From contig NC_068985.1 in the NCBI RefSeq assembly GCF_001194135.2, positions 123,471,976 to 123,535,975 on the forward strand: DNA of 64,000 nt, written 5' to 3'. Both the position numbers and the translations under genes were made by a program. The notes below the pieces were generated by a model. It did not search any database. It saw only the letters and a program-made list of their open reading frames with translations, and was not told where the DNA came from. Positions 7,301 to 45,295 of the stretch are shown piece after piece; the stretch's first letter is position 1; every line of letters starts with the position of its first letter. Source of the stretch: Octopus bimaculoides (taxonomy: Eukaryota).

Positions 7301-9475
7301 TTTATGAGATTGACACTGAACTAAAAGCAAAAATCACACATTACACATTACTTAATGCCTTGTTACTTATAGTGATAAACTGTGCTGCCCCATGATGTAT
7401 ATTTATAGACAGTTAAACTTAGCCATTGATTTATGTGCAATACTACAAATGAGATGCAGATATGCTGGTGTCTTATTGATTTAGCTAGCTGCTGTTTTCC
7501 TTAGTAATGTCCCGGGAGCTTAACTTGTCTGGTTGTTGTTGACATTATTCTCTGTGTGTGTGAGAGAGACAGAGAGAGAGAGAGAGTGTGTGTACGCATG
7601 CAAAATTTCAAATATATTTAATAAATTTGCCACTTTTTGATATCTATGTTTCAAATATGCAGTGAATATATCTTTGTGTCAAGCTTGCTCATTGCGTCCA
7701 TTTTTAACAACAAGATCTTTCTCCAGTGATGTGCAGAAGTTGTGAGGCAAAACTAGGATTCATTGAGCTGAACAACCAAATGTTCCAAGGGTCAGCATTT
7801 AGTGACTTCATTATGCATCTTTTCCACCTAAACATTTACAACATTCAATCGTATTACACATCTAGGAGACATTGCGTCAGTGTCTTCCGGACACTAATGA
7901 TTTTCACATACCAGTCACTCTGAATACATTCATTCTCAGTTTTGAGTTCATACTTTTGATCCTCCACTTTCTCATATTCAACTTATTTCTTTCTCTGACT
8001 AATGCAGATCCTTCACATTCTCTGCTTAAACAGTTTCACTATCATACATCCGTCACTCTCTTCTAATACATGACTCTACTACCATGGGTACAGTTCTTGG
8101 TAGGAAGGACTGGACTGTCTGGATGGGGAGACACAGTAAGAGTGGTGGGAAGGAAAGTTTACTGGTTGGATAGGTGATTCTTAAAGAAGATATGGAGTTA
8201 GTTTGAAACAGAGGTAGCTGCAGGCAATGAAATGAAACAGAATATTTGTGAATTAATGATTAAATTGAAAGCAGGTAACATCAGTTAACCTCTTAAAAAT
8301 GAGAGCTAAATCTCCCTCAAATCTCACTCTGTATATCATCTATACAGAGAATGACACACTGGATAATGAAATGCTAGATATGTCTGGAAAAGAGATGGGA
8401 TAGCTATGCTGAAATGCATTTAATTTTGTCTGCTGGATTAGGGACTGAGCCAAGGCTAAACAATGACAATAGCTACATGTTTAAAACCTGCCAATATCCT
8501 CCAAATGTTTCACCAACCATCAACAAGTGCTACTGGTAATATTTAAGTCTTATACAATTTATTGGGTGGTCTGTTACTAAACTGGCTGCTCTACAAAACT
8601 TGCCTCAAAGCTTGAAGAAGGTAGCTAGACACCCAGCAGGACAAAAACAGCTATCTAGAAATAGTGCAGAGATGTAGAAATTCCTGATTAATGTCTGGTG
8701 TGTTGTAAGACTACTGAGAAGAAGTAGCTTTTGTTAAATCATATCTCAAGAAGATGGCACTACTGTCTCCACATCTCACAGGCCATATAAACAGGTAGGT
8801 TGTCTGGACACAGCAACCTTGGAAGGCAGCCAGCCTAGCAGGAAGACAATTCCTAAATATAAACCTCACTGTCTGTTGAGTACCTGTAAAGGTTTAGGGA
8901 ATAAATCAGATCTGAAGAGAACTCAAGCCCACCAACCCTTTTCATCTCAAAGAGAGTTTGAAGTGGCAATGAATGAAAGCAGATTGGTGGTTGTATCTGA
9001 GGCTCCTGATTGTCAGTAACAAGGATGACAATATTTATTCTTGTAAATGGATTCAATTTGGTTAACTGAACCTCTAGTCTTTATTTTATCATTGATTGTA
9101 TATGAGAAGCAAACATGGCTGTGGGGTTAAGATTACATTGTAACTACATGATTTCAGGTTCGATCCTTCTCCACAGCAGCTCAGACTTGTGCTTTCTAGC
9201 TGTGGATGCAGCTATGACTGTGTGGTTAAGAAGTTTGCTTCATAACAATGTAGTTTTTGGTCCAGTTGCATTGCATGGTACCTTGGCTTTGTTTTCTCCC
9301 ATAGTCACAGATCTACCAAAGCCATGGGTGCTGGCAGTTATGAAGTTTACCTTGCATTGCTGTGGTTTCAGGTTTAATCCTACTGTGTGGTACCTTCAGC
9401 TTGCATTTCCTTCCTTAATCTCAAATTGACTAAAGTCTTTTGAATGGGATTCAGTATGCAGAAACTGTGCGGAAG

Positions 9476-9709
9476 AAGGCGGTGAGCTGGCAGAAACATT
9501 GGTGCACCGGGCGAAATGCTTAGCGGTATTTCTTCTGCCGTTACGTTCTGAGTTCAAATTCCGCCGAGGTCGACTGTGACTTTCATCCTTTCGGAGTCGA
9601 TAAATTAAGTACCAGTTAGGCACTGGGGTTGATGTAATCGACTTAGTCCCTTTGTCTGTCCTTGTTTGTCCCCCTTTATGTTTAGCCCCTTGTGGGCAAT
9701 AAAGAAACG
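9476..9709 (+). mobile_element. tRNA-derived SINE, family A (young copy)
   Basis: A-box-like AGCTGGCAGAA and B-box-like GAGTTCAAATTCC. Flanked by AGAAACTGTG(C/T)GGAAG at 9460-9475 and 9710-9725. Near-identical copies occur at 35809 and 44065. Confidence 0.85.
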
Positions 9710-11057
9710 AGAAACTGTGTGGAAGCCCTTCAGAGGGACCGTTCCCTTACTTGGGTGGTAGATTTAATGTTTCCTGGTTTAATACCACATCCTGGTCTTT
9801 AGGTCTTTTGTGGAATTTAAACATTGAGATTAGGTGTCTGGACAGAGGATAACGTCCTCCTTCCAATCTTAGAAGTCCTGGAATGAGGTCATGTGAATTA
9901 CCTTCCTCTGACTAAACAATAAAAAAAAAGAAAAACAAAAAAAAAACAAAAGAAAACCCTTTATATTCCAGCCTATAAAATGACTTATGAAGTTAACAAA
10001 AATTTGCTCAAATGTAGAGGCATCTTTAGTATTGAATATAAAAACTGTATCTTGGTGGTAATCTGTATTCTAGATTAGGTCAGTAAATTTGTTTTTACTT
10101 GAAATAAAATTAGTTCCATTATAATTAACTGCAAAATTAAGATAAAAATATTAACTGTACTTATATTATTAACTGTAATAATATATCAAATGTAACTGAC
10201 TAGTTATATCTATATACTAGCAAACGCAGCTGTCCTTTGGACGGTTTAAGTTGCTTTGGTGGTATATTTTTCACCAAATATTTGAACTTCCAAGAAGGTT
10301 TATGAGTAGCACAGCAACCTATGTTTCCGATTAACCTAGGAATGGAAAATCTAATTGAAGGCTGGTTATTGTGGAGGTGTTGCACTTTAAGGAGCATACA
10401 ACATATAAGTTTACAAGTGATGTAAAGTAGAGCTGCTGAAGTGTTTTGGGAGTAGATTACAGATTATGACTACAAAATATAGTTGTTTTACACGAAAGGG
10501 AAATTTCTTGTCAGAAACAGCCACATAAATGGTGTAATGAAATTGAAGGAAGACATTAAAACTTCCCCTCTGCGAGTTTATTTTTTTCAACATCAAAGGG
10601 AGCTATTTTTTGGAGAGATAAGCTAACAAATGCCCCTTTATTCTTTCTTCCCACATAGCCTGTGCATAAACTAACAGCAAATGCTGCATAAAGTTAAATT
10701 GGTATGGAGCTTTCTGAAAGATGCGTATAGATTTCGCTAGTGGAAGCAAAACTCTTATTTAAAGGTTGATTCTTTGGAACAAATCATATGTGATTGTTTA
10801 AATAAAGGCTAGAATGACAATGCTAAAGCGCATTTGAAACAATGGACAACATTTGAAATATCATAATGAATGGGTACATAAGCATCCTTAAAGTGAAACA
10901 ACGCATTGGTAGGTAAACAAATAGAAGAGAGTGAAGGGAACATCATCTTTCAAGTAACTCAGAATAGGTAAAGGTAAGCTTGCCAAAGTTTAATGCAGTT
11001 TAAATATGGAGATTAAGATTGTTTGGTATTGGATATTCATCGTGTATAATGATCCTG

Positions 11058-13089: not shown

Positions 13090-13167
13090 CTTCTCCGGAA
13101 TTAAAAGTCTTTTTTGGTACTGCTAAAAGTGAAGGTATACGGTTTATGAAGTTAAGTATTGAAAATG
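13090..13167 (+). CDS. TWF: Twinfilin, first coding exon visible in the window (equivalent to exon 2), 78 nt, phase 1-1
   Basis: CCCCAG acceptor and G|GTAAGT donor. Translates (A)SPELKVFFGTAKSEGIRFMKLSIEN, resembling the twinfilin N-terminus ([27 protein letters not shown], recalled). Phase 1 at the start implies an upstream ATG exon that I could not find. Confidence 0.9.
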
Positions 13168-15322: not shown

Positions 15323-15767
15323 GCTTCATACCTGCTGTATTTGCATTTATTCTTTGTAATTTTGTATAGAATATTCATTTTTCTCTAAGAGTGCTTTTAA
15401 CCTATTTTTATCTTTATTCTTTTGATTTAAATAAATCATTATCAAAAGAAATTATCATTTAAAAAAAATCAGTTTTCAAAAAGTCATTATTAAAAATAGA
15501 TGATTTAAGTTCTCATTATTTACAAAAATTATTATTAAAATTATTATTTAAAAGACCATTTTTAATTTTGAAAAAAACAATCATTATATTAAAAAATATT
15601 TTATTTTAAAAATGGTATTATTTAAAAAAATCATTAGTATTAAAAAATTCATTATTATTGAAAAATTAAACCATTCTTTTTAATAATCAATATCATTTTA
15701 AAAAATTATTAAAAAGATCTTCCAATTTTATTTCTTTTCATGTTTTTTTTTTCATTCTCTATTGCAG

Positions 15768-15818
15768 AAGTGCTAGCTTTAGAGAAACATTTGTTGCCAA
15801 AGGGTGACTGGAAAAGTG
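15768..15818 (+). CDS. TWF: Twinfilin coding exon 3a, 51 nt, ending at a U12-type AT donor
   Basis: TTGCAG acceptor. Translates (E)VLALEKHLLPKGDWKS(D), in frame with the previous exon, and is followed directly by ATATCCTTAT. Confidence 0.88.
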
Positions 15819-16054
15819 ATATCCTTATCTGCATTTATATAATGGTATATATATTGAATTCATGATGGACCTTGTAGTATTTTTTAGTCAGGTATTTTGA
15901 TGTGAGAAGTATTGTAATATCTCAAGAAATGTAACTGTGTGCAAGTGTATGTAATTGTCTTCCTGTCTGTCAGTACTTTGGTGATTGAGTGTGTTTGTCT
16001 GTGTGTCACACACACAGACATGGTGTATGTATCTACCATTTGTCCGATATGCAC

Positions 16055-16088
<34 letters not shown>

Positions 16089-16731
16089 CTGTGTATCTGT
16101 GTATTTGTATGTCTATAATCATATTTGTTTGCAAGTATGTGTGTGCGCATGTATGATGTACCATAGATAGAAATTTAATAAGAGACTGACAAAAAAAAAA
16201 AAATGCTATTCTTTATGGGGTTAGTTTATTCACAGATTAAAAACTTCAGTATCGCCAGCTGTATCTAAATACTAACTTTCACATGAAATAAGAAGTAACT
16301 AATGCTATGTTATATGTAACTCTTTCTCTATGCGTGTGTGAGCCTGGTGCAGCCATCTGGTTTGCCAGTCCTCAGTCAAATCGTTCAACCCNNNNNNNNN
16401 NNNNNNNNNNNNNNNNNNNNNNNNNNNNNNNNNNNNNNNNNNNNNNNNNNNNNNNNNNNNNNNNNNNNNNNNNNNNNNNNNNNNNNNNNNNNNNNNNNNN
16501 NNNNNNNNNNNNNNNNNNNNNNNNNNNNNNNNNNNNNNNNNNNNNNNNNNNNNNNNNNNNNNNNNNNNNNNNNNNNNNNNNNNNNNNNNNNNNNNNNNNN
16601 NNNNNNNNNNNNNNNNNNNNNNNNNNNNNNNNNNNNNNNNNNNNNNNNNNNNNNNNNNNNNNNNNNNNNNNNNNNNNNNNNNNNNNNNNNNNNNNNNNTT
16701 TTTAAAAATATTTCTGCTGCTTTTAAATAAA

Positions 16732-16771
<40 letters not shown>

Positions 16772-19004
16772 TACACATACACATCTGCAAAATCATCATT
16801 TAACATCCACTTTTCTATGCTTACATGGGTCAATCAGAATTTGTTGAAACAAATTTTCTGTGCCCAGATACCTTTTCTGTTACTAATGCCCAACGTTTTT
16901 GAATCAAGTTAATATTTTCTCACAGCAAGACATGTTTTCCACAGAAAACTGGAAACAACCTCGCTCACATGATGTTGATGCTCATTTACAACCATCATGT
17001 GATGTCTTGACAAATGTTCTCTCTATCACACATACACACATTTATTATTTTTATACAAGAATGCTATTGACAGTGACTTTGAAATTTCAGCTAGCTAAGT
17101 CATTGCTGGACTGCTGTTTGATGATGGTCTAGCTGGCTGAAACTTTGAGGTCACTGTTGACGATATTCTGGTATAAGAATAATGCATTTGTACTCTATAA
17201 ATCTACAGATTAATCCAGTCTTCCTTAAAAACCATATCTGGGTATGGGGTATATTAGTTTTTTTAGAAACAGGTGAAGGTTGGTGATAGGAAAGGCATTT
17301 AGCTGTTGAAAATCTGCCTTGCAAATTCCATCTGACCTAAGGAAGCATGGAAAAGTGGATGTTACATGACGATGATGTGTGTGTATTTATCTATGTAGTT
17401 TTCTACATCTGAAATTGTTTATACGAAAGAGCAACAGGTGGTGTTAGTTTCTCCTGTCAATAAATTATATGGTTACTTTGTGCTTTTGAATCCATGTTGA
17501 ATTAGAGACCTCTAACTTAGAAAACAGGTGAGGGATTGCATTAAAAAGTCATCCAGCTGTAAAACCGTTTCAAATAACATTCCTCTGTCAGATGCAAGTA
17601 TGAAAAATGGATTCAAAATAAACGAATGAACATATCTAGGATTCTATTATCCAGTCTGACCCTTCCTTATTGAAGATGGTAGAGTGTGGTTTGAGGGAAG
17701 ATTTGACTGATATTTCCTACAAGTTGAGGAGTCGTGTAGTGACCTCCCTTATCACTCTGACAAGAATGTTATTTAGTGTGGTGACAATACTGTGAAGGAA
17801 ACTTTTCTTGAGCTTGGACTTATGGGTGCAGATATCTCTTTAATAGCTCCTGACAGATGAACCAGTGAAGGTGACTTGACATGCTAGAAATGGCAGCCAA
17901 ATCTTCCTCGTGTCACATTGTATTGTCCAAAAAACAAAAAAAAAGCAAAAAAAAACAAAACAGACACTTGAGGTAATGTAGTTTGAGATAAAACCATGGT
18001 TGAGACCAGAATACTTTTGATCATTGGTCTGGTCAAACAAGATTCATTGAGGTTGTGGGGCTAAACAGCAGCTTCCTAAGGTGATGTCAATTATTCCCCT
18101 TCGAATATGCCTTTAGATAAATCTCTCCAATTGTTTGGAATATGAATGGTATCCTTAAATTTCTGTTTCATTTAATTTATCCTGTCGTTATTATTATTTT
18201 CATTCTTAGCAAAACCTATTAAGCAACACTAATAATAAATCAAAGAACATAAAAATAAACAAGCTTTTGATGGTTTTATAGATATTTCAAAATTATGATT
18301 CTATGATGCTAGGTGTTTCCATTATTTTGTCCAACCCTTGTATACATGAACAAGGCAGTGTCTTTAGTGTCGGTGCCATGATAAATGCACCCTGTATACA
18401 CCGTAGTCATTGGTAAATAAGCAGAGAAGGTGTCGTTTTGTGAGATCCTTTTATTCCTGTGTTGCTAAGGACTACTCAACCTCTCTGAAATTGGTACCAT
18501 GAGAAAATGTATCCAGTATACTTTGTAATACAGTTGGTGATTGGAATTGCATCCAGCCATAGAAACTAACCAAAATAGCATGTGTGAGCACACCGGTCAA
18601 TGGGAATGATGGTTCTCAAAAAGAAATGACTTGGTCTGTGATGATCGGTCCAGTATATACTAGCGTGGAAAGTGATGATATTATACCATCATGACAATTC
18701 TGGGTAATTAATGATTCCTTGAGATTATCTCCCTTTTTTGTTCAGAGTTTGTTGCAGTTGCCACTAGATGTTTGTTTTATCTTTGCTTGAAGTGAAGATA
18801 ATTTCTTCCGTCTTTGTAGCCCAGATTCATGCCACTCACTTCTCTCAGCTCATTTTCATTGTCTGTCTGTCTGTCTGTCTGTCTTTCTCCCCACTCTCTC
18901 TGTATGTGCATGTGTTCATGAATCAATACTTCCTGGTTATGGATCTATGATTTTGTGAGACTAACAGATGCCACAGATATATATATCCTTAACAGATCTT
19001 TCAC
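15819..19004 (+). other. U12-type (minor spliceosome) AT-AC intron, 3186 nt including a gap
   Basis: 5' end ATATCCTTAT; TCCTTAAC at 18986-18993; 3' end TTTCAC. Splicing gives WKSDYDKMVL, colinear with twinfilin WDKDYDSFVL (recalled). Confidence 0.9.
16392..16698. other. Assembly gap (others at 52167-52305, 54543-55170, 59044-59204, 59652-60069 and 63752-63981)
   Basis: Runs of N, nearly all abutting microsatellites or young repeats. Confidence 1.
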
Positions 19005-19132
19005 ATTATGATAAAATGGTCCTTACCTATTTGGATGATAAGAAACCTTGTTACATACTATATCGCTTGGATACAAAAAATAACCTTGGATATGAATGGC
19101 TCTTTATTGCTTGGTCTCCTGACTTTTCACCG
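19005..19132 (+). CDS. TWF: Twinfilin coding exon 3b, 128 nt
   Basis: Translates (D)[42 protein letters not shown], the ADF-H motif region; donor CCG|GTAAGT. Confidence 0.95.
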
Positions 19133-20104: not shown

Positions 20105-20200
20105 GTGCGCGAGAAAATGGTATATGCTGCTACACGGGCAACCTTGAAGTCTGAGTTTGGCGGAGGTGTAATAAAGGAGGAATTATTTGGTACAGTTGAA
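20105..20200 (+). CDS. TWF: Twinfilin coding exon 4, 96 nt
   Basis: TTTAG acceptor and GTAAGT donor. [32 protein letters not shown] contains the twinfilin [18 protein letters not shown] signature. Confidence 0.97.
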
Positions 20201-21940: not shown

Positions 21941-22045
21941 GATGATATTTCTTTGAATGGCTTTCTGAAACATATAGAATTCCAAAAGGCACCTGCTCCA
22001 TTAACGTTTGCTGAGGAAGAGCTAGAAATTATTAAGAAAACTGAA
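21941..22045 (+). CDS. TWF: Twinfilin coding exon 5, 105 nt
   Basis: TTTTAG acceptor and GTAAGT donor. DDISLNGFLKHIEFQKAPAPLTFAEEELEIIKKTE contains the PAPLTxAEEEL linker motif. Confidence 0.96.
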
Positions 22046-25345: not shown

Positions 25346-25471
25346 GTGAATACTGATGTGAATATTGATACCAAGAATCAAACTATGCAAGGTCTAGCAT
25401 TCCCTATAACAAATGATTGTGTTGCAGCTTTGGAGCGCCTGAGGAATGGTTTAATAACTTATGTCCAGCTT
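25346..25471 (+). CDS. TWF: Twinfilin coding exon 6, 126 nt
   Basis: GTTAG acceptor and GTAAGT donor. Translates VNTDVNIDTKNQTMQGLAFPITNDCVAALERLRNGLITYVQL. Confidence 0.96.
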
Positions 25472-25812: not shown

Positions 25813-26163
25813 ACTTTTACTTGTTTCAGTCATTTGACTGTGGCCATGCTGGAGCACCGCCTATTTTTTTTAGTTGAAGAAATTGACCCTTGAACTTATT
25901 CTTTGTTAGCCTAGTACTTATTCTATCAGTTTTTTTTGTTGAACCACTAAGTTATGGAGATATAAACACACCAGTATTGGTTGTCAAGCAATGGATGGGG
26001 GACGAACACACACACACACACACATATATGATGGGCTTCTTTCATTTTCCTTTGATCAGCCTGCGGCTATAGTAGAAGACACCCAAAGTGCCATGCAGTG
26101 AGACTGAACCTGGAACGATGTGGTTGAAAAGCAAGCTCCTTACCACACATCCACGCCTGCACC

Positions 26164-26164
<1 letters not shown>
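25813..26164 (-). mobile_element. SINE family B, minus strand
   Basis: Reverse complement of the 13955-14363 element, e.g. TACTTTTACTTGTTTCAGTCATTTGACTGTGGCCATGCTGGAGCACCGCC. Confidence 0.85.
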
Positions 26165-26196
<32 letters not shown>

Positions 26197-26197
26197 A

Positions 26198-26239
<42 letters not shown>

Positions 26240-26350
26240 TGAGAATGTGTGTCTGTCTGTCTGTATGTGAGCATCACTAAAACTTGAGAACTACCCAACC
26301 GATACATTATTTACAATTGACGGATATTTGTCCTCATCTTGTTTGTTGTT

Positions 26351-26397
26351 AACACAACATTTCAGCTGATATACCCTCCAGCCTTCATCAGGTGTTT
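26351..26397 (-). ncRNA. Minimal hammerhead-like motif, copy 2 (core boxes intact)
   Basis: Minus strand reads AAACAC-CTGATGA-A-GGCTG-GAGGGTATAT-CAGCT-GAAA-TG-T-T-GTGTT. Confidence 0.65.
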
Positions 26398-26487
26398 TGG
26401 GAAAATTTTGAACCTGTGTTCTCATTCCTAAGGTATTTTTCGATGTTGTTGTTATTATTGATTGTTGTTTTTGTTTCTTATCTTCAG

Positions 26488-26638
26488 AGTATTGATATTG
26501 AAAGAGAAAGAATTTGCTTAGAAACTGAAGCCGACATTGACGTCAGTTCATTACCAATGAAAGTGCCTGATAACCATGCCCGGTATCATTTCTTTATATT
26601 CAAACATACCCATGAAGGAGATTATTTAGAGAACATTG
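26488..26638 (+). CDS. TWF: Twinfilin coding exon 7, 151 nt
   Basis: TTCAG acceptor and G|GTTTGT donor. Translates SIDIERERICLETEADIDVSSLPMKVPDNHARYHFFIFKHTHEGDYLENI(V). Confidence 0.95.
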
Positions 26639-26765
26639 GTTTGTATGCCTTTCTTTTTCTTTTTTTGTTCTTTCTTTGTATGAGTGCAACTGTGTCTGTA
26701 TGATGTTTGTATAAACACACATACACACACACACACATATGCAACCCCATATCAATACAACTAAA

Positions 26766-26992
26766 TTAGCCCTTTAACCCTCAATTTATTTTGTCAAATG
26801 TAATGCTTATTTATTTGCGTTCTTTTGAATTGATCAGGCATTATCTTGTAACTTCAAGATTCAATGATGTGATTGTTTATGTTTAGAACAACATTGTAGC
26901 ATTAGTGTGAGAGGTTTGATATGGCTACTTTGAACATAAAACGGACATAATATTTGGGCCAGATAAGGCTGGTTTAAATGCTAAAGGGTTAA
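26766..26992. mobile_element. piggyBac-type MITE (family E)
   Basis: Ends AATGCTAAAGGGTTAA; body similar to 15095-15322. Confidence 0.6.
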
Positions 26993-27385
26993 AGCATGCA
27001 TGTAGCTGAAACCCTGGAAGCTGTGGTTTTCATCCAAGGAAAGTCTCTTTACAGGAAATTTTGTTCAAAAACACAATAAACTTCAGAACTAGGTGAAACA
27101 AAAATCACCTGTGATGTGATTGCAAGAGCGACAGACACATTTTTTCTCATTATTGTGCTTTATTAATGTCATGTGGGCATGTCACTTCTGCAATAACATT
27201 GAATCAGCTAGAATGATGTATATACAGATAGTGTATAAACTATACACTGGCTTGTAATGGCACTGCACTTGCAGAAATTCATATTATGCAATGAAAGCAG
27301 TTCTATAGTAAAAACTAAAATATTTAATGTATGTGTGTATTTGAAACACTAGAAGCTGTGGTTTTCATCTGGGGAAAAATCCCTT

Positions 27386-27416
<31 letters not shown>

Positions 27417-27432
27417 TAACAACAACAACAAC

Positions 27433-27648
27433 AATCCTCTCTACTGGAAATGCAAGGCCTCAAATTTGGGGGAAGGGATTAAATCAATTACATCGACCCC
27501 AGTGTGTAACTGTTACTATTTAATTGACCCTGGGAGGATGAAAGGCAAAGTCGACCTTGGTGGAATTTGAACTCAGAACATAGCAATGGCTGAAATGCCG
27601 CTAGGCATTTCACCTGGCATGCTAATGATTCTGCAAGCTCACTGCCTT
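27433..27648 (-). mobile_element. SINE family A, older subfamily, embedded in (AAT/AAC)n
   Basis: Reverse complement of the family A head and central block (GGATGAAAGGCAAAGTCGACC...GAATTTGAACTCAGAAC). Confidence 0.75.
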
Positions 27649-28154: not shown

Positions 28155-31100
28155 CATCATCATCACCATTTAACATCTGTTTTCCATGCTGGCTTGGGTT
28201 GGACAGTTTGACTGGAGCTGGTAAGGCTGGGAGCCACACCAGGCTCCATTGTCTGTTTTGGTATGGCTTCTATGGCTAGAAGCCCTTCTAACATTAACCA
28301 CTTTACAGAGTGTACTGGTTGCTTTTTACATGGCACCTGCACCAGTTTCTTTTTACATGGTACTAGCACCAACTGGATTACTAAGTAACTTGCAAAACAG
28401 CCTCCTGCCTCTGCTGGGAGTAAGGAGTAGTCGTGAGATTTGTGCTTTGTGATAGTTGATGAGAGATTAGAGGTGTAGATGGACAAGGATAGGTGTCTTG
28501 CTGTAGAGAAATACATGGATACCCCAGTTGGAAAAGAACGGATAGTGAGTTAGAGAGTAAGATAAAGAGAATAGGTTAGTTAGAGAGTAAAATAAAGAGG
28601 GATAGTGAGAGATGGTGGTGAAGATGTGTTGAGACAGGTGATAGTGGCAAATGATAGAGTAAATATAGGAGAGGATCAGGGCTGGGGGTGGGGTGCTGTT
28701 GATATGCGAGGGCATTGGGAGTGAGAACAGATAAGCAAAGGTGTTAATAACACAAGAGAGAGAAGGCACAGAAAGGAGGTGATTGGCGAAGACAGTATGC
28801 AGGGAAAGATAATGGCGAATGGAAATGTTTCAGGTGTGGGAAGGAGGGTAACTGGAGAAAGCAGGGGGATGTAGTATGTGCTGTTTCTGCTCTCAGGTGA
28901 TAGAGAAGTGATGAGCGTTCGGGGATGAAATGAGGTGAGAAATTATTGACAGAGCAGAAATGATGCAAGTATGTGTGGGGCAGAGCTCTCACAGACAAAC
29001 ATTACCAGGGTGGTTTTTAGGATATCAATTTTGCTGTGGTAGCCTTGAGTATAGCAAGGTGCTAGGTATCTCGATTGTTTCTCATCTTTGTGAGTTTGTA
29101 AGGCTTGGTGTCTTGATCAACCTGCAATACTTTGTCTCATATCTTCCTTGGTCTCCCTCTTCCACAAGTTCCCTTTACTTTTAAGTGATTGGCACTTTAT
29201 ACAACTGTCCACATTCATAAGCATCATATGACCAAACCAGCGTAGTCTTCTCTCTTGCACATTGAATCTAATTCCTCTTTTGCTAACTCACAATATACTA
29301 GTTCTCTGTCACACATGTACACTGACATTGCACCTCCAAGGGAGCATACTAGCTTCATTCTTTTCTAGTCTTCACATGTCTGCATTCAGAGCCCACATCT
29401 CACTACCATATAGCATTGCAGTTTGTATACATTTGGTTGCTGACAGAAGTAAAAGTTCTCTCAATTTTCTCCATCCTAGTCTTATTCAAGCAATTACACT
29501 TTCCATACATCCTCCTCCACTGCTAATTAGGTTCCCTAGGACCTAATTAGCAGAAATTATCCACAATCTCTCTGGGGCATTTGAGAAAAAATCAATTTCC
29601 TGTGTATCTGTACACTTTATTGCTCTTGTGCATCTTCCACATACAAGCACTTCTTTCTTGGTTAACCTTCTTATTATTCCACTATACCTCTTGTGTGTCC
29701 ATAGTTTGCACTGAGTACACCATATGAAATTCCTGCATACACTCTTCCTACATATCAAACTGGGTCATTTACCTGAAGTGGGTAAGGTTCTGTCTGTTTT
29801 CTTGTTAACTAGAACCTTGGTCTTTGCCAAGTTAACCTCAATGCCTTTTGACTCCAGGTTTTGCTTCCATGTCTGGAATTTCTTTTCTAGTTCCATTGTA
29901 GAATCTGCTATGAAAGCAAGATCATCAGCATAGAGCAGTTCCCAGGGGCAGCTGGTCTTGAACAGACGTGGAGGACAATGATGAAAAGGAAGGGACTCTG
30001 AGAACCAAACCCTAATTTCATCACTTTACTCCTGTTTAACTCTCACCTTACTGTCATTTTACTAACAGACCCTCTGAACATGGCCTGTACATCTTTCACA
30101 GGCCACTTGTCTACCCCTAGCTTCCTCAGAGCCCACCATATCACTCAATGGAGTACTCTGTCAAAGGCTTTCTCCAAGTTAAGAAAAGCCAAGTCCAATG
30201 GTTTATTCTTTGTTAAATACTTCTGAAGTTGTCTGACTTTGAGGATAACATCAGTAGTGCTTCTCCTTGGCACAAATTCAAACTGCATTTCAATTAATCT
30301 GATTCTGTTCCTAATTGATTGGGCTATAACTCTTTTCATAACTTTGATGACCTGGTCCAGCTATTTGATGTCTCTGTAATTACTTCTATCTCAGACATCT
30401 CCCTTACCCTTGTAGCAGCTGACGATAATGCTGCTACAAGTTATTTCCTGAATAACTTTATTAACTATACAGGTAACCAGATTGTATCATACTCCATCAG
30501 ATATTTTAAGCATCTCAGTGCTGACTCCCAATAAACCAGGGGCTTCCCCTGTCTTCATATTACCTTATCTGTCATACTGCTGTCAACTTGAATAGCTGTT
30601 ACCCCTGTCAGGTTCCCATAGGCAAGACTCCCTTTCTCCCATTCACTCTCCACATTTAATTGCCTTTCATAGTAGTACTTCCATACCTCTTTCTTTTCAA
30701 GATCACTAAGTGCAAGCATACCATCATCCATCCATACACACTTCTTTCCTACAACGTCTCTATTCTCTCTGACACACTGTCTAACAATCTGGAACTCCTC
30801 TAGCCTCTGATTTTCACTCTGTAAGGCATTTGCAAATCTCTTCCGTTCTGCGTCTGTCCTTGCTAGATTAACCCTAACTTCCCTCATGGCTACTTGCTAT
30901 AGCTCTTTGCTGTCTCCATTTCTCCAATCTTTCCAAGCCTGCCTCTTTGTTTTTATGACCTTATCTATTTCACTGTTCCACCACCTTATCACTCTTTGCC
31001 TCAGCCATAAATTTGGTCTGTAGCCTTCAGAAAGTTGTCTTGTAAGAATTTCCAGTTGTCCTCTATGTTATATGTCACAACCTCCTCTGCTTTCTTATCA

Positions 31101-31476: not shown

Positions 31477-31598
31477 TATTCATATATTCTACTCCTGGTT
31501 ATAGTATTCCAGTGAAAGAAAGAATGCTTTATTCAAGCTGTAAATCTTGTTTTCTCAGTTATGTTGAACAGAATATGGGAATGGAAATTGTCAAGAAG
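31477..31598 (+). CDS. TWF: Twinfilin coding exon 8, 122 nt
   Basis: TTGCAG acceptor and AAG|GTGAGT donor. Translates (V)FIYSTPGYSIPVKERMLYSSCKSCFLSYVEQNMGMEIVKK. Confidence 0.96.
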
Positions 31599-33188: not shown

Positions 33189-34446
33189 TACAAAGTGGTA
33201 TAAAAAAACTTCCTGGATTAGTTCTGTAACATGCCAACAGATGGCAGCACACATTGGCATGTGCAGTGAGAGCTAGCAGTGACCTTCATGATGTAGTATG
33301 CCAAGTGACATTATTGTGTTTACTTTTCAAGTTGAGAAATTTTGTGTTTTTGTGATCATGTGTATGTTGTAGTCTGTAATTTTGTCATGGACAGGGAGTT
33401 TGATCAAAGAGCGAACATGAAATTTTGCATTAGATTTTGAAAGTCTGCAACAGAGACATTAAGCATGCTTCAGCAAGCTTACAGTGACGAAGCAATGGTT
33501 CATATGCAGTGTTTCAAGTGGCATAGGCACTTCAAAAGAGGAAGAATGTGCCTGGAATACCTGCCATGAGCATCACCTCTGGAAATGTGGAGAAAATTCA
33601 TCAGTTTGTGCATGAGGATCGTCGGAGAGCAATCAACAACATTACTGATATCCTTGGTCTGTCTTATGGGTCTGTGCAGGCAATCCTAATGTCTGAATTA
33701 AAAATGCAACACATTTCTGCCAAGTTTGTCCCCCACCTGCTGACCACTGAATTGAAAGAACATCACATTGAAGTCTGTCGGAGTGCCACTGGTGACCCAT
33801 CTTTCACGTCAAAGACCATCACCGGTGACAAGACTTGGGTCTAAGGGTATGACCCTGAGATGAAGCAGCAGTTGTCACAATGGAAGAGCTCTTTATCTCC
33901 ATGACTGAAGATGGTATGACAGAGCTGCAGAGTATGCACATCACTTTTTCGACATCTGCAGTATTGAGAATTCACTCTGCTGGGCCAGACTGTCAATTGA
34001 GAGTTCTCCTGCGACGTTTTGAAGTATTTGAGGGAGGACATTTGGCGAAAGCAACTGGAACTGTGGAGTGTGAAGAATTGGATTCTTCATGATGACAATG
34101 TACCCTGTCACCAAGCTCTCCTCACTTATGAATTTCTTACCAAAAACAACATGGTATCACTTCTGCACCCACTCTGCCGATTTCCATCTCTTTCTCAAGA
34201 TAAAAATGCAGTTCAAAGATTACTGTTTTAACACCATTGTTGAGATCCAGAGCGAATTGCAGAAGCTCCTAAACTCACTTATGGGAAACGACTTACAGGC
34301 TTGATTCCAAAAGTGGCAGGAATGCTGGGACTGGTGTATTGCTGCACAAGGTGACTATTTCAAAGGAGATGATGTTTAAAATTAGGCAAATAAGTTGTTT
34401 TTTATTAAACATACCTAGTCTGGGAACTTTATGATGCTACCTCATA
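33189..34446 (+). mobile_element. Full-length decayed mariner transposon (~1.26 kb) in the last twinfilin intron
   Basis: TA at both ends with imperfect ~30-bp TIRs. Transposase remnant from ATG 33387: DQRANMKFC, AKFVPHLL, TGDKTWV*GYDPE, WILHDDN and ADFHLF. Contains stops and frameshifts, and the YSPDLAP motif is deleted. Confidence 0.9.
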
Positions 34447-35167: not shown

Positions 35168-36114
35168 CAATGTCTTTCTTCATTTTTTTTATTGAAAAAA
35201 GAAATTTCTATTTATAATTATTGAACATTTGATAATCCTTTTTTTCAATATAATTATTGAACATTTGATAAATTTTGTTTGATTGACAAGAGTTATGTTG
35301 TATGATTGATGTAAAAGATGAGGTTTGAAATTTCATTAAAAAAAAACACAATTTGTAACTGATTTTTATATATATAAATTTGAAATAAATGTTTTAGTAT
35401 TTTTTTTTTTGGTTGTGGTGGTGAGGATGGGTGGTATAAAATGATATTTAAGAAATGTCTTTTTTTAAAAAATTTTGTATTACATTTTATAGTTGATTGG
35501 AGAATTATAATTTAAAAAAGCAAATCAACAAAATTCCAAAATATGGTTGATATATATTTACCCTGTGAAATATTTCCAAATATTTAATCTTTCATTATTT
35601 TATAAGTGGTGAAGATTGATTTATTTAGTCTACAAACTATTTCTAAATTCCTATTTAATCCTATATACTAAGTGAAAAGTCCTTTTGTTGCCGTCGTCTT
35701 TGTCTATTTCACTACTTGGGTTTTGGTGTGCTCTGGTCAGTTGGTGACTCCTTGACCCTGTATGAATTTCTATTTCGTAACATATACATATACACAGATG
35801 ATGTGTTGGAGCTGGCAGAATCGTTAGCACGCCGGGCGAAATGCCTAGCGGTATTTCGTCTGCCGTTACGTTCTGAGTTCAAATTCCGCCGAGGTCGACT
35901 TTGCCTTTCATCCTTTTGAGGTCGATAAATTAAGTACCAGTTACGCACTGGGGTCGATGTAATCAACTTAATCCCTTTGTGTGTCCTTGTTTGTCACCTC
36001 TATGTTTAGCCCCTTGTGGGCAATAAAGAAATAAGTTGTTGCCTATTATAGTAAATATTTCCAGAAACTGGGATAAAATGCAGTCTCAAAGCTGATTGGC
36101 TGAATTTGAACTCA
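35168..36114 (+). repeat. Intronic copy of a ~720-bp segment of the twinfilin 3'UTR, interrupted by a SINE
   Basis: Colinear and near-identical to 36732-37449 apart from the SINE at 35809-36033. Confidence 0.95.
35809..36033 (+). mobile_element. SINE family A, slightly 5'-truncated, no TSD
   Basis: Near-identical to the 9476 and 44065 copies; the empty site is visible near 37350-37370. Confidence 0.9.
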
Positions 36115-36299: not shown

Positions 36300-36464
36300 A
36301 TTGAAATTTCTGAGGGTGCTGAATTAACTGATGAGTTCTTGCAGGATGAACTTCATCCAAAGAAAAATATTGCTCGGCAAGCATTTGCTAAACCAAAAGG
36401 CCCTTCAAATCGAGGACCAAAGCGAATGATCAGACCCACTTCAGATTCATCTGCAGTTAACTGA
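36300..36464 (+). CDS. TWF: Twinfilin last coding exon, 165 nt including TGA
   Basis: Poly-T tract then TCTAG acceptor. IEISEGAELTDEFLQDELHPKKNIARQAFAKPKGPSNRGPKRMIRPTSDSSAVN* contains the capping-protein-binding tail motif FAKPKGP. Confidence 0.96.
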   Translation: MEISEGAELTDEFLQDELHPKKNIARQAFAKPKGPSNRGPKRMIRPTSDSSAVN

Positions 36465-44018: not shown

Positions 44019-44052
<34 letters not shown>

Positions 44053-44064
44053 ACATGCACACAT

Positions 44065-44295
44065 GAGGGCGAGCTGGCAGAAACGTTAGCACGCCGGGCG
44101 AAATGCATAGCCGTATTTCGTCTGCCGCTACGTTCTGAGTTCAAATTCCGCCGCGGTCGACTTTGCCTTTCATCCTTTCGGGGTTGATTAAATAAGTACC
44201 AGTTACGTACTGGGGTCGATATAATCGACTTAATCCGTTTGTCTGTCCTTATTTGTCCCCACTGTGTGTAGCCCCTTGTGGGTAGTAAAGAAATA
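44065..44295 (+). mobile_element. SINE family A with 8-bp TSD
   Basis: GCACACAT at 44057-44064 and 44296-44303; CpG-rich and near consensus. Confidence 0.9.
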
Positions 44296-45295
44296 GCACA
44301 CATATACACAAGGTCCTGCTCACATACACACCTACACATAGTACTCATGTCCTCAAACTTTATCTTTTCCAATCTACTTCATTGGATCAAATACAAAGAC
44401 TTAAACATGGCTGCAACCACGACTAGAGATAAGGTTGCCTGGAGAGGTTTTTTCTCTCAATGCCAAGATGCTAAACAAACTTTGGATCAACAATAATAAT
44501 GATGTGTTGTTAATGATCAGAAGGTTGATAAAATAAACACTTTTGACATAAGAAATACATCTGGGCTGTATTTCTTATTTCTATTATTTTGCTTCATTTT
44601 TTTTTTGTTATTGATCTATAGTTTCATGAAGTCTCATATATGTAAATGTTTTTAGTTATATTTTTTCAGAGTTAAAGCAATTTATAAAAATAAAACAAGT
44701 TGATAGCTTTACCTGGCATTTTGATATTTCAGGATTAGGATCCATTCCTCTGAAAATCATTGGAGATTAGTTGTTATTTGTTAACCTTTTCTTCAAAGAT
44801 TTCCTGAGGAAGAAGTTCTAACCATGCAATATTGAAATATCAGGGAAAGCTATCAGCCTGTTTTATTTTTATAAATTGCTTGTTTTGGCTTTAGTAAAAC
44901 AATTAAAAGCTTTTATTTTATTATTTTATTATTTTTTTTTGTCTCAATCAGAGCAGCAGCTGCAGTGATTTTGAGGCTGTTGGAATAAAAGGAATATATT
45001 ATCCTCTGTGCAAAGATCTGGCCTGGCTGCTTACAATAGAATTAACTCTTCTAAAGCAGTCAAGGACCAGGCAATGCTGTTGTTAAACTGGGTGGTACAT
45101 TAAATCTAGCTCCCAAGAACAAACCATGTCATTAATAGGCTTCCATACAATTTCTAACTACTAATTTTTTTTCCTCAAAACCTGAGGCTATGGAAGAATG
45201 CCCAAGGTAGTGTGGAGTGGGATTGAATTCAAAACTACATACATTTTGTGGAGCAAATTTCTAAACTGCACAAAATATGTGTATACACACCTACA

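What the first reader, a model, noticed from the sequence alone, without database searches (positions are those of the whole stretch)
15819..19004. AT-AC minor-spliceosome (U12) intron in twinfilin
Seen: the exon ends ...AAAAGTG|ATATCCTTAT; a perfect TCCTTAAC branch sequence has its A 12 nt from the 3' end; the intron ends TTTCAC|ATTATGAT. Joining gives W-K-S-D-Y-D-K with no indel against twinfilin. Established: these are the U11/U12 consensus signals, AT-AC introns are rare, and minor introns can be rate-limiting for expression. The two flanking exons sum to 179 nt. I recall vertebrate twinfilin exon 3 as 179 nt and the other internal exons as 78, 96, 105, 126, 151 and 122 nt, matching this gene; this was not checked. 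Inference: the intron is either an ancient U12 intron lost in vertebrates or a rare lineage-specific gain, and either would be informative.
Basis: partly seen in the sequence, partly recalled or inferred. Interest (0 to 1): 0.8.

Follow-up and report, generated by a model that had tools for sequence, protein, structure and literature searches.

The report
Conserved AT-AC minor intron in twinfilin
The octopus twinfilin gene really does contain a textbook AT-AC intron of the rare minor-spliceosome (U12) type; it is shared with squid-like cephalopods, an oyster and an annelid, replaced by an ordinary intron in a tick and a horseshoe crab, and absent from mammals, so it is a well-behaved old minor intron rather than a surprise.

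Summary
The window is Octopus bimaculoides (GCA_001194135.2, CM046605.1). Twinfilin exon 3a (15768-15818) is followed by ATATCCTTAT. The intron ends ATCCTTAAC-N10-AC at 19004, with the branch A 12 nt from the end. Joining 15818 to 19005 gives W-K-S-D-Y-D-K, with no indel in a 16-species alignment. The model equals RefSeq XP_014775634.1, so the junction is already in the public CDS.

An intronless cDNA contig from a related octopod carries GGAAAAGTG|ATTATGATAAA. The N gap lies inside the intron. Its flanks are colinear with the gap-free O. sinensis intron, so only the intron length is uncertain.

At the same phase-1 position:
- O. sinensis, Argonauta, Sepia, Crassostrea virginica and the annelid Lamellibrachia have AT-AC introns with U12 signals (133-5974 nt).
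- A tick and a horseshoe crab have U2-type GT-AG introns.
- Mammalian TWF1 (exon 3 = 179 nt) and TWF2 have none.

This rules out a cephalopod-specific gain. The intron dates at least to the lophotrochozoan ancestor, and the position at least to the protostome ancestor. Loss in the vertebrate lineage is likely but untested in basal deuterostomes or cnidarians.

The rival GT/AG pair is in frame (+2 aa). It is what the O. vulgaris GenBank model uses, but it is weak and not conserved.

This is a new member of a known kind, of modest interest.

The parts
13090..13167 (+). twinfilin exon 2 (78 nt), GT-AG flanks
15768..15818 (+). twinfilin exon 3a (51 nt), which ends ...TGG AAA AGT G in phase 1
15819..19004 (+). 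AT-AC U12-type intron. The length of 3186 nt includes an estimated 307-N gap.
15819..15828 (+). U12-type 5' splice site ATATCCTTAT, a perfect match to /ATATCCTT
   Evidence: identical in O. sinensis, and ATATCCTTT in Argonauta, Sepia, C. virginica and Lamellibrachia
16392..16698 (.). Assembly gap (N), wholly intronic. The flanks are colinear with the gap-free O. sinensis intron. About 560 nt of window around it (16320-16884) corresponds to only 51 nt in O. sinensis.
18985..18993 (+). U12 branch-point sequence ATCCTTAAC. The branch A at 18992 lies 12 nt from the intron's last base.
19003..19004 (+). 3' terminal AC of the intron
19005..19132 (+). twinfilin exon 3b (128 nt), which starts AT TAT GAT AAA
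15816..15817 (+). Cryptic or alternative U2-type donor GT (AAA|gtgata). With the AG at 18994-18995 it is in frame (+6 nt).
18994..18995 (+). Cryptic or alternative U2-type acceptor AG, immediately after the branch-site motif. It has the poorest pyrimidine tract of the gene (10 of 20).
20105..20200 (+). exon 4 (96 nt)
21941..22045 (+). exon 5 (105 nt)
25346..25471 (+). exon 6 (126 nt)
26488..26638 (+). exon 7 (151 nt)
31477..31598 (+). exon 8 (122 nt)
36300..36464 (+). coding part of the last exon, through the stop codon

Best explanation
Window 15819-19004 is a U12-dependent (minor-spliceosome) intron of the AT-AC subtype. It splits what is a single 179-nt exon 3 in mammals, in the twinfilin gene of Octopus bimaculoides.

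Mechanism, inferred from established knowledge of the minor spliceosome:
- The U11 snRNA, and later U6atac, pairs with ATATCCTT at the 5' end.
- The U12 snRNA pairs with TCCTTAAC, bulging the branch A 12 nt upstream of the terminal AC.
- Splicing joins 15818 to 19005 in phase 1, inside the Asp codon (G|AT) of the conserved W-x-x-D-Y-D motif of the first ADF-H domain.

Evolution:
- The intron is old. It is kept as AT-AC in cephalopods, a bivalve and an annelid.
- The same position holds a U2-type GT-AG intron in chelicerates, most simply through minor-to-major conversion.
- Mammalian TWF1 and TWF2 have no intron there, most simply through loss.

Shown: the signals, their exact placement, the protein produced, a cDNA junction in a related octopod, and the cross-phylum conservation. 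Inferred: actual dependence on U11/U12, the direction of the chelicerate change, and loss rather than never-presence in the vertebrate lineage.
For: - Signals and coordinates are as stated.
- The joined exons give GDWKSDYDK. The nine-exon model is contained identically in RefSeq XP_014775634.1, twinfilin-1 of O. bimaculoides.
- W49 and Y53 are invariant, D52 is at least 90% conserved, and there is no indel between them in 16 twinfilins from molluscs, an annelid, a brachiopod, a bryozoan, a nemertean, arthropods and vertebrates.
- A 1543-nt contig from sequencing run SRR3401912 lacks all eight introns that fall within the window's exons. It reads AAAGGGTGACTGGAAAAGTG|ATTATGATAAAATGG across the junction.
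- At the same position (CDS nt 154, phase 1), the annotated proteins of five other species require AT-AC introns:
  - O. sinensis: ATATCCTTAT...ATCCTTAAC...AC, 3086 nt;
  - Argonauta hians: ATATCCTTT...TTCCTTAAC, 292 nt;
  - Sepia pharaonis: ATATCCTTT...TTCCTTAAC, 5974 nt;
  - Crassostrea virginica: ATATCCTTT...TTTCTTAAC, 133 nt;
  - Lamellibrachia satsuma: ATATCCTTT...GTCCTTGAC, 588 nt.
- The tick Ornithodoros (G|gtaaga...ttgcag|AC) and the horseshoe crab Tachypleus (G|gtaaaa...tgacag|AT) have U2-type introns at exactly that position.
- Condylura TWF1 and Pongo TWF2 read through the position without an intron.
- All seven other introns of the gene in the window are GT-AG, five of them with a gtaagt donor.
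- The literature reports molluscs as relatively rich in minor introns, includes Octopus sinensis in its survey, and treats conversion as essentially minor-to-major only (PMC10639083).
Against: - No transcript from O. bimaculoides itself was examined. The RefSeq model is a prediction whose evidence I could not see.
- An in-frame GT-AG alternative exists in Octopus species and is used in the O. vulgaris GenBank protein CAI9723658.1.
- U11/U12 dependence was not, and cannot be, tested here. intronIC was not run.
- No cnidarian, sponge, echinoderm, hemichordate, cephalochordate or non-mammalian vertebrate locus was examined, so 'lost in the vertebrate lineage' rests on parsimony plus the general rarity of minor-intron gain.
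Confidence: 0.92

Rival explanations
1. The intron is mainly removed by the major spliceosome. It would use the nested GT at 15816 and AG at 18994-18995, giving a twinfilin with two extra residues (W-K-N-L-S-H-Y-D-K). The AT-AC signals would then be incidental.
For: The pair is in frame and free of stops. The O. vulgaris GenBank protein CAI9723658.1 (350 aa) has exactly this insertion.
Against: - The insertion falls between the invariant W49 and Y53 and replaces the conserved D52. None of 16 aligned orthologues has an indel there.
- The cDNA contig L002 and the RefSeq models of O. bimaculoides and O. sinensis use the AT-AC junction.
- The donor AAA|gtgata contrasts with gtaagt in 5 of the 7 other introns. 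The acceptor has the poorest pyrimidine tract of the gene, 10 of 20 against 14-19.
- No in-frame, stop-free GT/GC-AG alternative exists in Argonauta, Sepia, C. virginica or Lamellibrachia.
- Pipelines that allow only canonical splice sites shift AT-AC junctions in this way (my own knowledge).
Confidence: 0.04
2. The intron is a recent gain, specific to the octopus or cephalopod lineage.
For: Mammalian TWF1 and TWF2 lack it.
Against: AT-AC introns with U12 signals lie at the identical codon position and phase in a bivalve and an annelid. U2-type introns lie at that position in two chelicerates.
Confidence: 0.01
3. The intron is a minor intron gained on the protostome stem. Deuterostomes would then never have had it, so nothing was 'lost in vertebrates'.
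For: The only deuterostomes examined are two mammals, and both paralogues lack it. No outgroup (cnidarian or sponge) was examined.
Against: Minor-intron gain is regarded as very rare in animals, and most minor introns are ancient (PMC10639083). All eight other intron positions are shared between octopus and mammal, so this gene's structure is otherwise ancestral to bilaterians.
Confidence: 0.2
4. The split exon is an assembly artefact. The N gap would hide coding sequence or a misjoin, so the two exon halves would not really be one intron apart.
For: There is a 307-N gap of estimated size inside the interval. About 560 nt of window around it has only 51 nt of counterpart in O. sinensis.
Against: Both flanks are colinear, in the same orientation, with the gap-free O. 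sinensis intron, which has the same ends. cDNA joins 3a directly to 3b. The protein has no missing residues.
Confidence: 0.01

Closest known systems
Canonical AT-AC U12-type introns of animals, for example the classic introns of human NOP2/P120, SCN4A and CDK5 (named from my own knowledge)
   Same: - The 5' end is ATATCCTT.
- The branch site is TCCTTAAC, 10-13 nt from the 3' end.
- The intron ends in AC and has no strong pyrimidine tract.
- It is a single such intron among otherwise GT-AG introns, and it is not in phase 0.
   Different: The host gene is different. Searches for twinfilin with U12, and for 'minor intron' with TWF1, found no report of a minor intron in twinfilin. The mammalian TWF1 and TWF2 examined have no intron at this position.
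Minor-to-major (U12-to-U2) intron conversion and minor-intron loss, as surveyed by Larue and Roy 2023 (PMC10639083)
   Same: One orthologous position shows all three states: U12 AT-AC in molluscs and an annelid, U2 GT-AG in chelicerates, and absence in mammals.
   Different: The direction of change is inferred, not shown. That paper notes that ixodid ticks and the horseshoe crab Limulus are relatively rich in minor introns, so a U2-type intron here in an argasid tick and in Tachypleus is mildly unexpected.
U2-type AT-AC introns (a rare class spliced by the major spliceosome; named from my own knowledge)
   Same: The terminal dinucleotides are AT and AC.
   Different: Those introns have U1-compatible 5' ends (ATAAGT-like) and no TCCTTAAC branch site. 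This intron has the full U12 signals.

Membership tests
U12-type (minor-spliceosome) intron, AT-AC subtype | 5' splice site matching /[AG]TATCCTT directly at the exon edge | tested here: met
   ATATCCTTAT at 15819-15828. It is conserved as ATATCCTT in five orthologous introns.
U12-type (minor-spliceosome) intron, AT-AC subtype | Branch-point sequence TCCTTAAC (TTCCTTRAY) lying about 10-15 nt from the 3' splice site | tested here: met
   ATCCTTAAC at 18985-18993, with the branch A 12 nt from the last intron base. In the orthologues where my pattern found the motif, the equivalent spacing is 10-12 nt. The oyster variant TTTCTTAAC was seen by eye.
U12-type (minor-spliceosome) intron, AT-AC subtype | Terminal dinucleotides AT...AC | tested here: met
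   AT at 15819-15820 and AC at 19003-19004.
U12-type (minor-spliceosome) intron, AT-AC subtype | The mRNA is actually joined at these sites | tested here: met
   The octopod cDNA contig L002 has the exact junction. The RefSeq proteins of O. bimaculoides and O. sinensis require it. Caveat: no transcript of O. bimaculoides itself was read.
U12-type (minor-spliceosome) intron, AT-AC subtype | Removal depends on the U11, U12, U4atac and U6atac snRNPs | not testable with these tools
   This needs knockdown or inhibition experiments.
U12-type (minor-spliceosome) intron, AT-AC subtype | The host organism has a working minor spliceosome | not tested
   No snRNA gene lies in the window; Rfam gave 0 matches. 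The literature reports molluscs as relatively rich in minor introns and includes Octopus sinensis (PMC10639083).
U12-type (minor-spliceosome) intron, AT-AC subtype | A high classifier score (intronIC or equivalent position-matrix scoring) | not tested
   intronIC is not available here. Only consensus matching was done.
Twinfilin (host gene) | Two ADF-H (cofilin-like) domains plus a conserved C-terminal tail, and orthology to named twinfilins | tested here: met
   Pfam Cofilin_ADF matches in two stretches, E = 2.3e-40. The model is identical to XP_014775634.1 over 339 aa and 54-59% identical to non-cephalopod twinfilins.
U2-type AT-AC intron | A U1-compatible 5' end (ATAAGT-like) and no U12 branch consensus | tested here: not met
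   The 5' end is ATATCCTT and a perfect TCCTTAAC is present.

The most novel reading that the evidence does not exclude
The twinfilin intron at CDS nt 154 is a minor intron ancestral to bilaterians or older. On this reading it was deleted before the vertebrate TWF1/TWF2 duplication and converted to U2-type in chelicerates. In Octopus the nested in-frame GT-AG pair would be a genuine second splicing route, so the two spliceosomes compete on one intron and yield a +2-residue isoform of the first ADF-H domain when minor splicing is limiting.
Probability: 0.08. Interest if true: 0.45.

Novelty: new member of a known kind. Interest (0 to 1): 0.25.

Why it matters
It adds one clean, three-state example (kept as U12, converted to U2, absent) to the record of how minor introns evolve. 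It does so in a gene whose eight other intron positions are the same in octopus and mammal.

In practice it flags an annotation hazard. The O. vulgaris GenBank twinfilin carries a 2-residue insertion that looks like a canonical-site workaround for this AT-AC intron.

It does not change any general view of minor splicing. The junction is already implicit in RefSeq, and it is probably listed in the public minor-intron catalogue built from such annotations.

Tried and rejected
- Exon 1 (MSHQTGIT) was searched for in the window and is not there. It lies about 9.4 kb upstream of the window start, beyond another gap.
- Lingula twinfilin could not be looked up because it is not on record.
- A short-peptide search for proteins carrying the alternative WKNLSHYDK junction returned one unrelated fragment. 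It did not even recover the known octopus proteins, so it says nothing either way.
- The metagenome scan gave mostly intronless transcript contigs and a few genomic contigs of unknown animals. Two of these (L063, L077) show an AG-ending intron at the same position, but with no taxon attached they add little.
- Rfam found no RNA family in the window.
- The supplement of PMC10639083 held here does not list individual introns.
- The motif counts alone were rejected as evidence, because both motifs occur at about chance frequency in this AT-rich window.
Full report
**What is in the sequence.** The + strand reads ...GACTGGAAAAGTG|ATATCCTTATCTGC... with the break after 15818. Further on it reads ...ATATATATCCTTAACAGATCTTTCAC|ATTATGATAAAATGG... 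with the break after 19004. TCCTTAAC occupies 18986-18993. Its second A (18992) is 12 nt from the last intron base. Exon 3a (15768-15818) is 51 nt and is preceded by ...tctattgcag. Exon 3b (19005-19132) is 128 nt and is followed by gtaagt. Together they are 179 nt and read ...[32 protein letters not shown]....

**Gene model and origin.** A tblastn with a recalled human TWF1 sequence, followed by inspection of the splice sites, gives these exons:

| Exon | Coordinates | Length (nt) |
|---|---|---|
| 2 | 13090-13167 | 78 |
| 3a | 15768-15818 | 51 |
| 3b | 19005-19132 | 128 |
| 4 | 20105-20200 | 96 |
| 5 | 21941-22045 | 105 |
| 6 | 25346-25471 | 126 |
| 7 | 26488-26638 | 151 |
| 8 | 31477-31598 | 122 |
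| 9 (coding part) | 36300-36464 | 165 |

All other introns are GT-AG. The 339-residue translation has two Cofilin_ADF stretches. It is contained without a mismatch in XP_014775634.1, twinfilin-1 of Octopus bimaculoides. The window is a piece of GCA_001194135.2, chromosome CM046605.1. Window base 1 falls directly after an assembly gap, and exon 1 lies about 9.4 kb upstream of the window. So the AT-AC junction is already part of the public RefSeq coding sequence, although nothing labels it as a minor intron.

**The assembly gap.** The gap at 16392-16698 lies inside the intron. Window 15700-16320 aligns to O. sinensis 25936-26606, and window 16884-17895 aligns to 26657-27612. Both are in the same order and orientation, at about 85-87% identity. 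The O. sinensis intron has no N and is 3086 nt long. The roughly 560 nt of window around the gap has only 51 nt of counterpart in O. sinensis. It is therefore a lineage-specific insertion or deletion of unread content. Because the whole interval is spliced out, continuity of frame across the gap is not an issue. Only the intron length (3186 nt) is an estimate.

**Is it more than chance?** The motifs alone are not. ATATCCTT occurs 6 times in the window against 3.9 expected. TCCTTAAC-N6-13-AC occurs twice against 0.9 expected. The weight comes from placement and conservation. Both motifs lie exactly at the two positions where homology requires the exons to be joined.

**Evidence for the junction.**
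- In an alignment of 16 twinfilins, W49 and Y53 are invariant, D52 is nearly invariant, and there is no indel between them. The sequences come from molluscs, an annelid, a brachiopod, a bryozoan, a nemertean, arthropods and vertebrates.
- A 1543-nt contig assembled from run SRR3401912 encodes a twinfilin about 89% identical to the window's protein. Its exon 2 to exon 9 sequences are contiguous, so it is a cDNA. Across the junction it reads AAAGGGTGACTGGAAAAGTG|ATTATGATAAAATGG.
- Decapodiform transcript-derived proteins, seen on many contigs, read NWQNDYDK. This matches the AT-AC join in the Sepia pharaonis genome.

**The rival junction.** The GT at 15816 and the AG at 18994-18995 are in frame. 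The O. vulgaris GenBank protein CAI9723658.1 (350 aa) carries exactly this insertion. I regard it as a canonical-sites-only annotation artefact rather than the main isoform, for four reasons:
- It puts two residues between invariant positions and removes the conserved Asp.
- The donor is AAA|gtgata, whereas five of the seven other donors in the gene are gtaagt.
- The acceptor has the poorest pyrimidine tract of the gene, 10 of 20 against 14-19.
- No in-frame, stop-free GT/GC-AG alternative exists in Argonauta, Sepia, Crassostrea or Lamellibrachia.

Low-level use in Octopus cannot be excluded without reads.

**Across species.** At CDS nucleotide 154, phase 1 (the G|AT of the Asp codon), the states are as follows:

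| Species | Intron at CDS nt 154 | 5' end | Branch region | Length (nt) |
|---|---|---|---|---|
| O. bimaculoides (window) | AT-AC | ATATCCTTAT | ATCCTTAAC | 3186 (estimate) |
| O. sinensis | AT-AC | ATATCCTTAT | ATCCTTAAC | 3086 |
| Argonauta hians | AT-AC | ATATCCTTT | TTCCTTAAC | 292 |
| Sepia pharaonis | AT-AC | ATATCCTTT | TTCCTTAAC | 5974 |
| Crassostrea virginica | AT-AC | ATATCCTTT | TTTCTTAAC | 133 |
| Lamellibrachia satsuma (annelid) | AT-AC | ATATCCTTT | GTCCTTGAC | 588 |
| Ornithodoros turicata (tick) | U2-type GT-AG | G\|gtaaga | ttgcag\|AC acceptor | 384 |
| Tachypleus tridentatus (horseshoe crab) | U2-type GT-AG | G\|gtaaaa | tgacag\|AT acceptor | 1455 |
| Condylura cristata TWF1 | none (exon 3 = 179 nt) | - | - | - |
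| Pongo abelii TWF2 | none (RWDRDYD contiguous) | - | - | - |

In Condylura TWF1 the remaining junctions fall at CDS nt 103, 282, 378, 483, 609, 760 and 882.

**Interpretation.** The intron is a regular AT-AC minor intron. Its signals have been held constant while its length varied 45-fold and the rest of its sequence diverged beyond recognition. That is the signature of functional splice signals. A cephalopod-specific gain is excluded. The U12-type intron was present at least in the common ancestor of molluscs and annelids.

The same position is occupied in chelicerates, and conversion is taken to run from minor to major (PMC10639083). The simplest history is therefore a U12-type intron in the protostome ancestor that was converted in the chelicerate line. 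Absence from both mammalian paralogues fits a single loss before their duplication. This step is inferred, because no basal deuterostome or non-bilaterian was available. I give a gain on the protostome stem about 0.2.

Whether the intron limits twinfilin expression in octopus is untested speculation.

**Comparison with what is known.** The signals match the classical AT-AC U12 class. They do not match the rare U2-type AT-AC class. Literature searches found no paper linking twinfilin to U12 or minor introns. A pan-eukaryotic catalogue built from RefSeq and other annotations explicitly includes Octopus sinensis and reports molluscs as relatively rich in minor introns. This intron is therefore very probably already listed there automatically. 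I class it as a new member of a known kind and score its interest at 0.25.

**Limits.**
- No O. bimaculoides transcript was read.
- No intronIC score was computed.
- snRNP dependence is untestable here.
- The taxon sample for the deep history is thin.
- One protein search was uninformative.

Noticed in passing
window 15816-15817 and 18994-18995; protein P0121 (O. vulgaris CAI9723658.1): The O. vulgaris GenBank twinfilin is 350 aa and reads GDWKNLSHYDK. That is the in-frame GT-AG workaround for this AT-AC intron. It is probably a mis-annotation that adds two residues and removes a conserved Asp.
   Followed up: partly
window 18983-18990: A second exact ATATCCTT (the 5' splice-site motif) overlaps the branch-site motif at the 3' end of the same intron, as atATATCCTTAAC. 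It is probably a coincidence of the shared TCCTT core.
   Followed up: no
window 16320-16884: About 257 nt of read sequence plus the 307-N gap correspond to only 51 nt in the O. sinensis intron. The left edge (16359-16391) is unique in the window. The right edge is an (AT)n run. This looks like an unresolved lineage-specific insertion.
   Followed up: partly
window 29768-30025 (- strand), inside twinfilin intron 7: An open frame with a reverse-transcriptase motif (...LLYADDLAFIADS...). The Pfam RVT_1 score is 27.3 bits, just under the 29.6 cut-off. It is a decayed retrotransposon fragment.
   Followed up: partly
window 33527-34301 (+ strand), inside twinfilin intron 8: Several short open frames look to me like a decayed mariner/Tc1-type transposase (for example ...LHDDNVPCHQALLT...). 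Pfam gave no match.
   Followed up: partly
window 9399-9746 (-), 35715-35993 (-), 44022-44378 (-): Open frames share the peptide ...RPRRNLNSERNGRRNTA.HFARR..., which suggests copies of one interspersed repeat.
   Followed up: no
window 26639-26646: The donor of intron 7 is TTG|gtttgtat, unlike the gtaagt or gtgagt of the other introns. Argonauta has gttagt at the same junction.
   Followed up: no
L063 about 2826 and L077 about 5490 (metagenome contigs, unknown animals): Both have an AG-ending, U2-looking acceptor (ttttcattcag|AC TAT GAT and gaattttag|AT TAT GAC) at the same phase-1 position. This adds further lineages in which the position is occupied by a non-AT-AC intron.
   Followed up: partly
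L051, L053, L055, L056, L068 (metagenome contigs): These twinfilin loci, which look arthropod-like or otherwise invertebrate, lack the intron at nt 154. They have an intron after ...YILYR|LD..., a position not used in octopus or mammals.
   Followed up: no
protein P0128 (ENA fragment, 66 aa): An open-frame read-through into exon 3b reads ...LTLIH|YDIHV.... This would fit a ...TTAAC...AC|AT 3' end in yet another organism. Its DNA could not be fetched.
   Followed up: no
window 1 and L008 9151-10417: The window begins immediately after a 1267-N gap of the chromosome record. Twinfilin exon 1 lies upstream of that gap, outside the window.
   Followed up: yes
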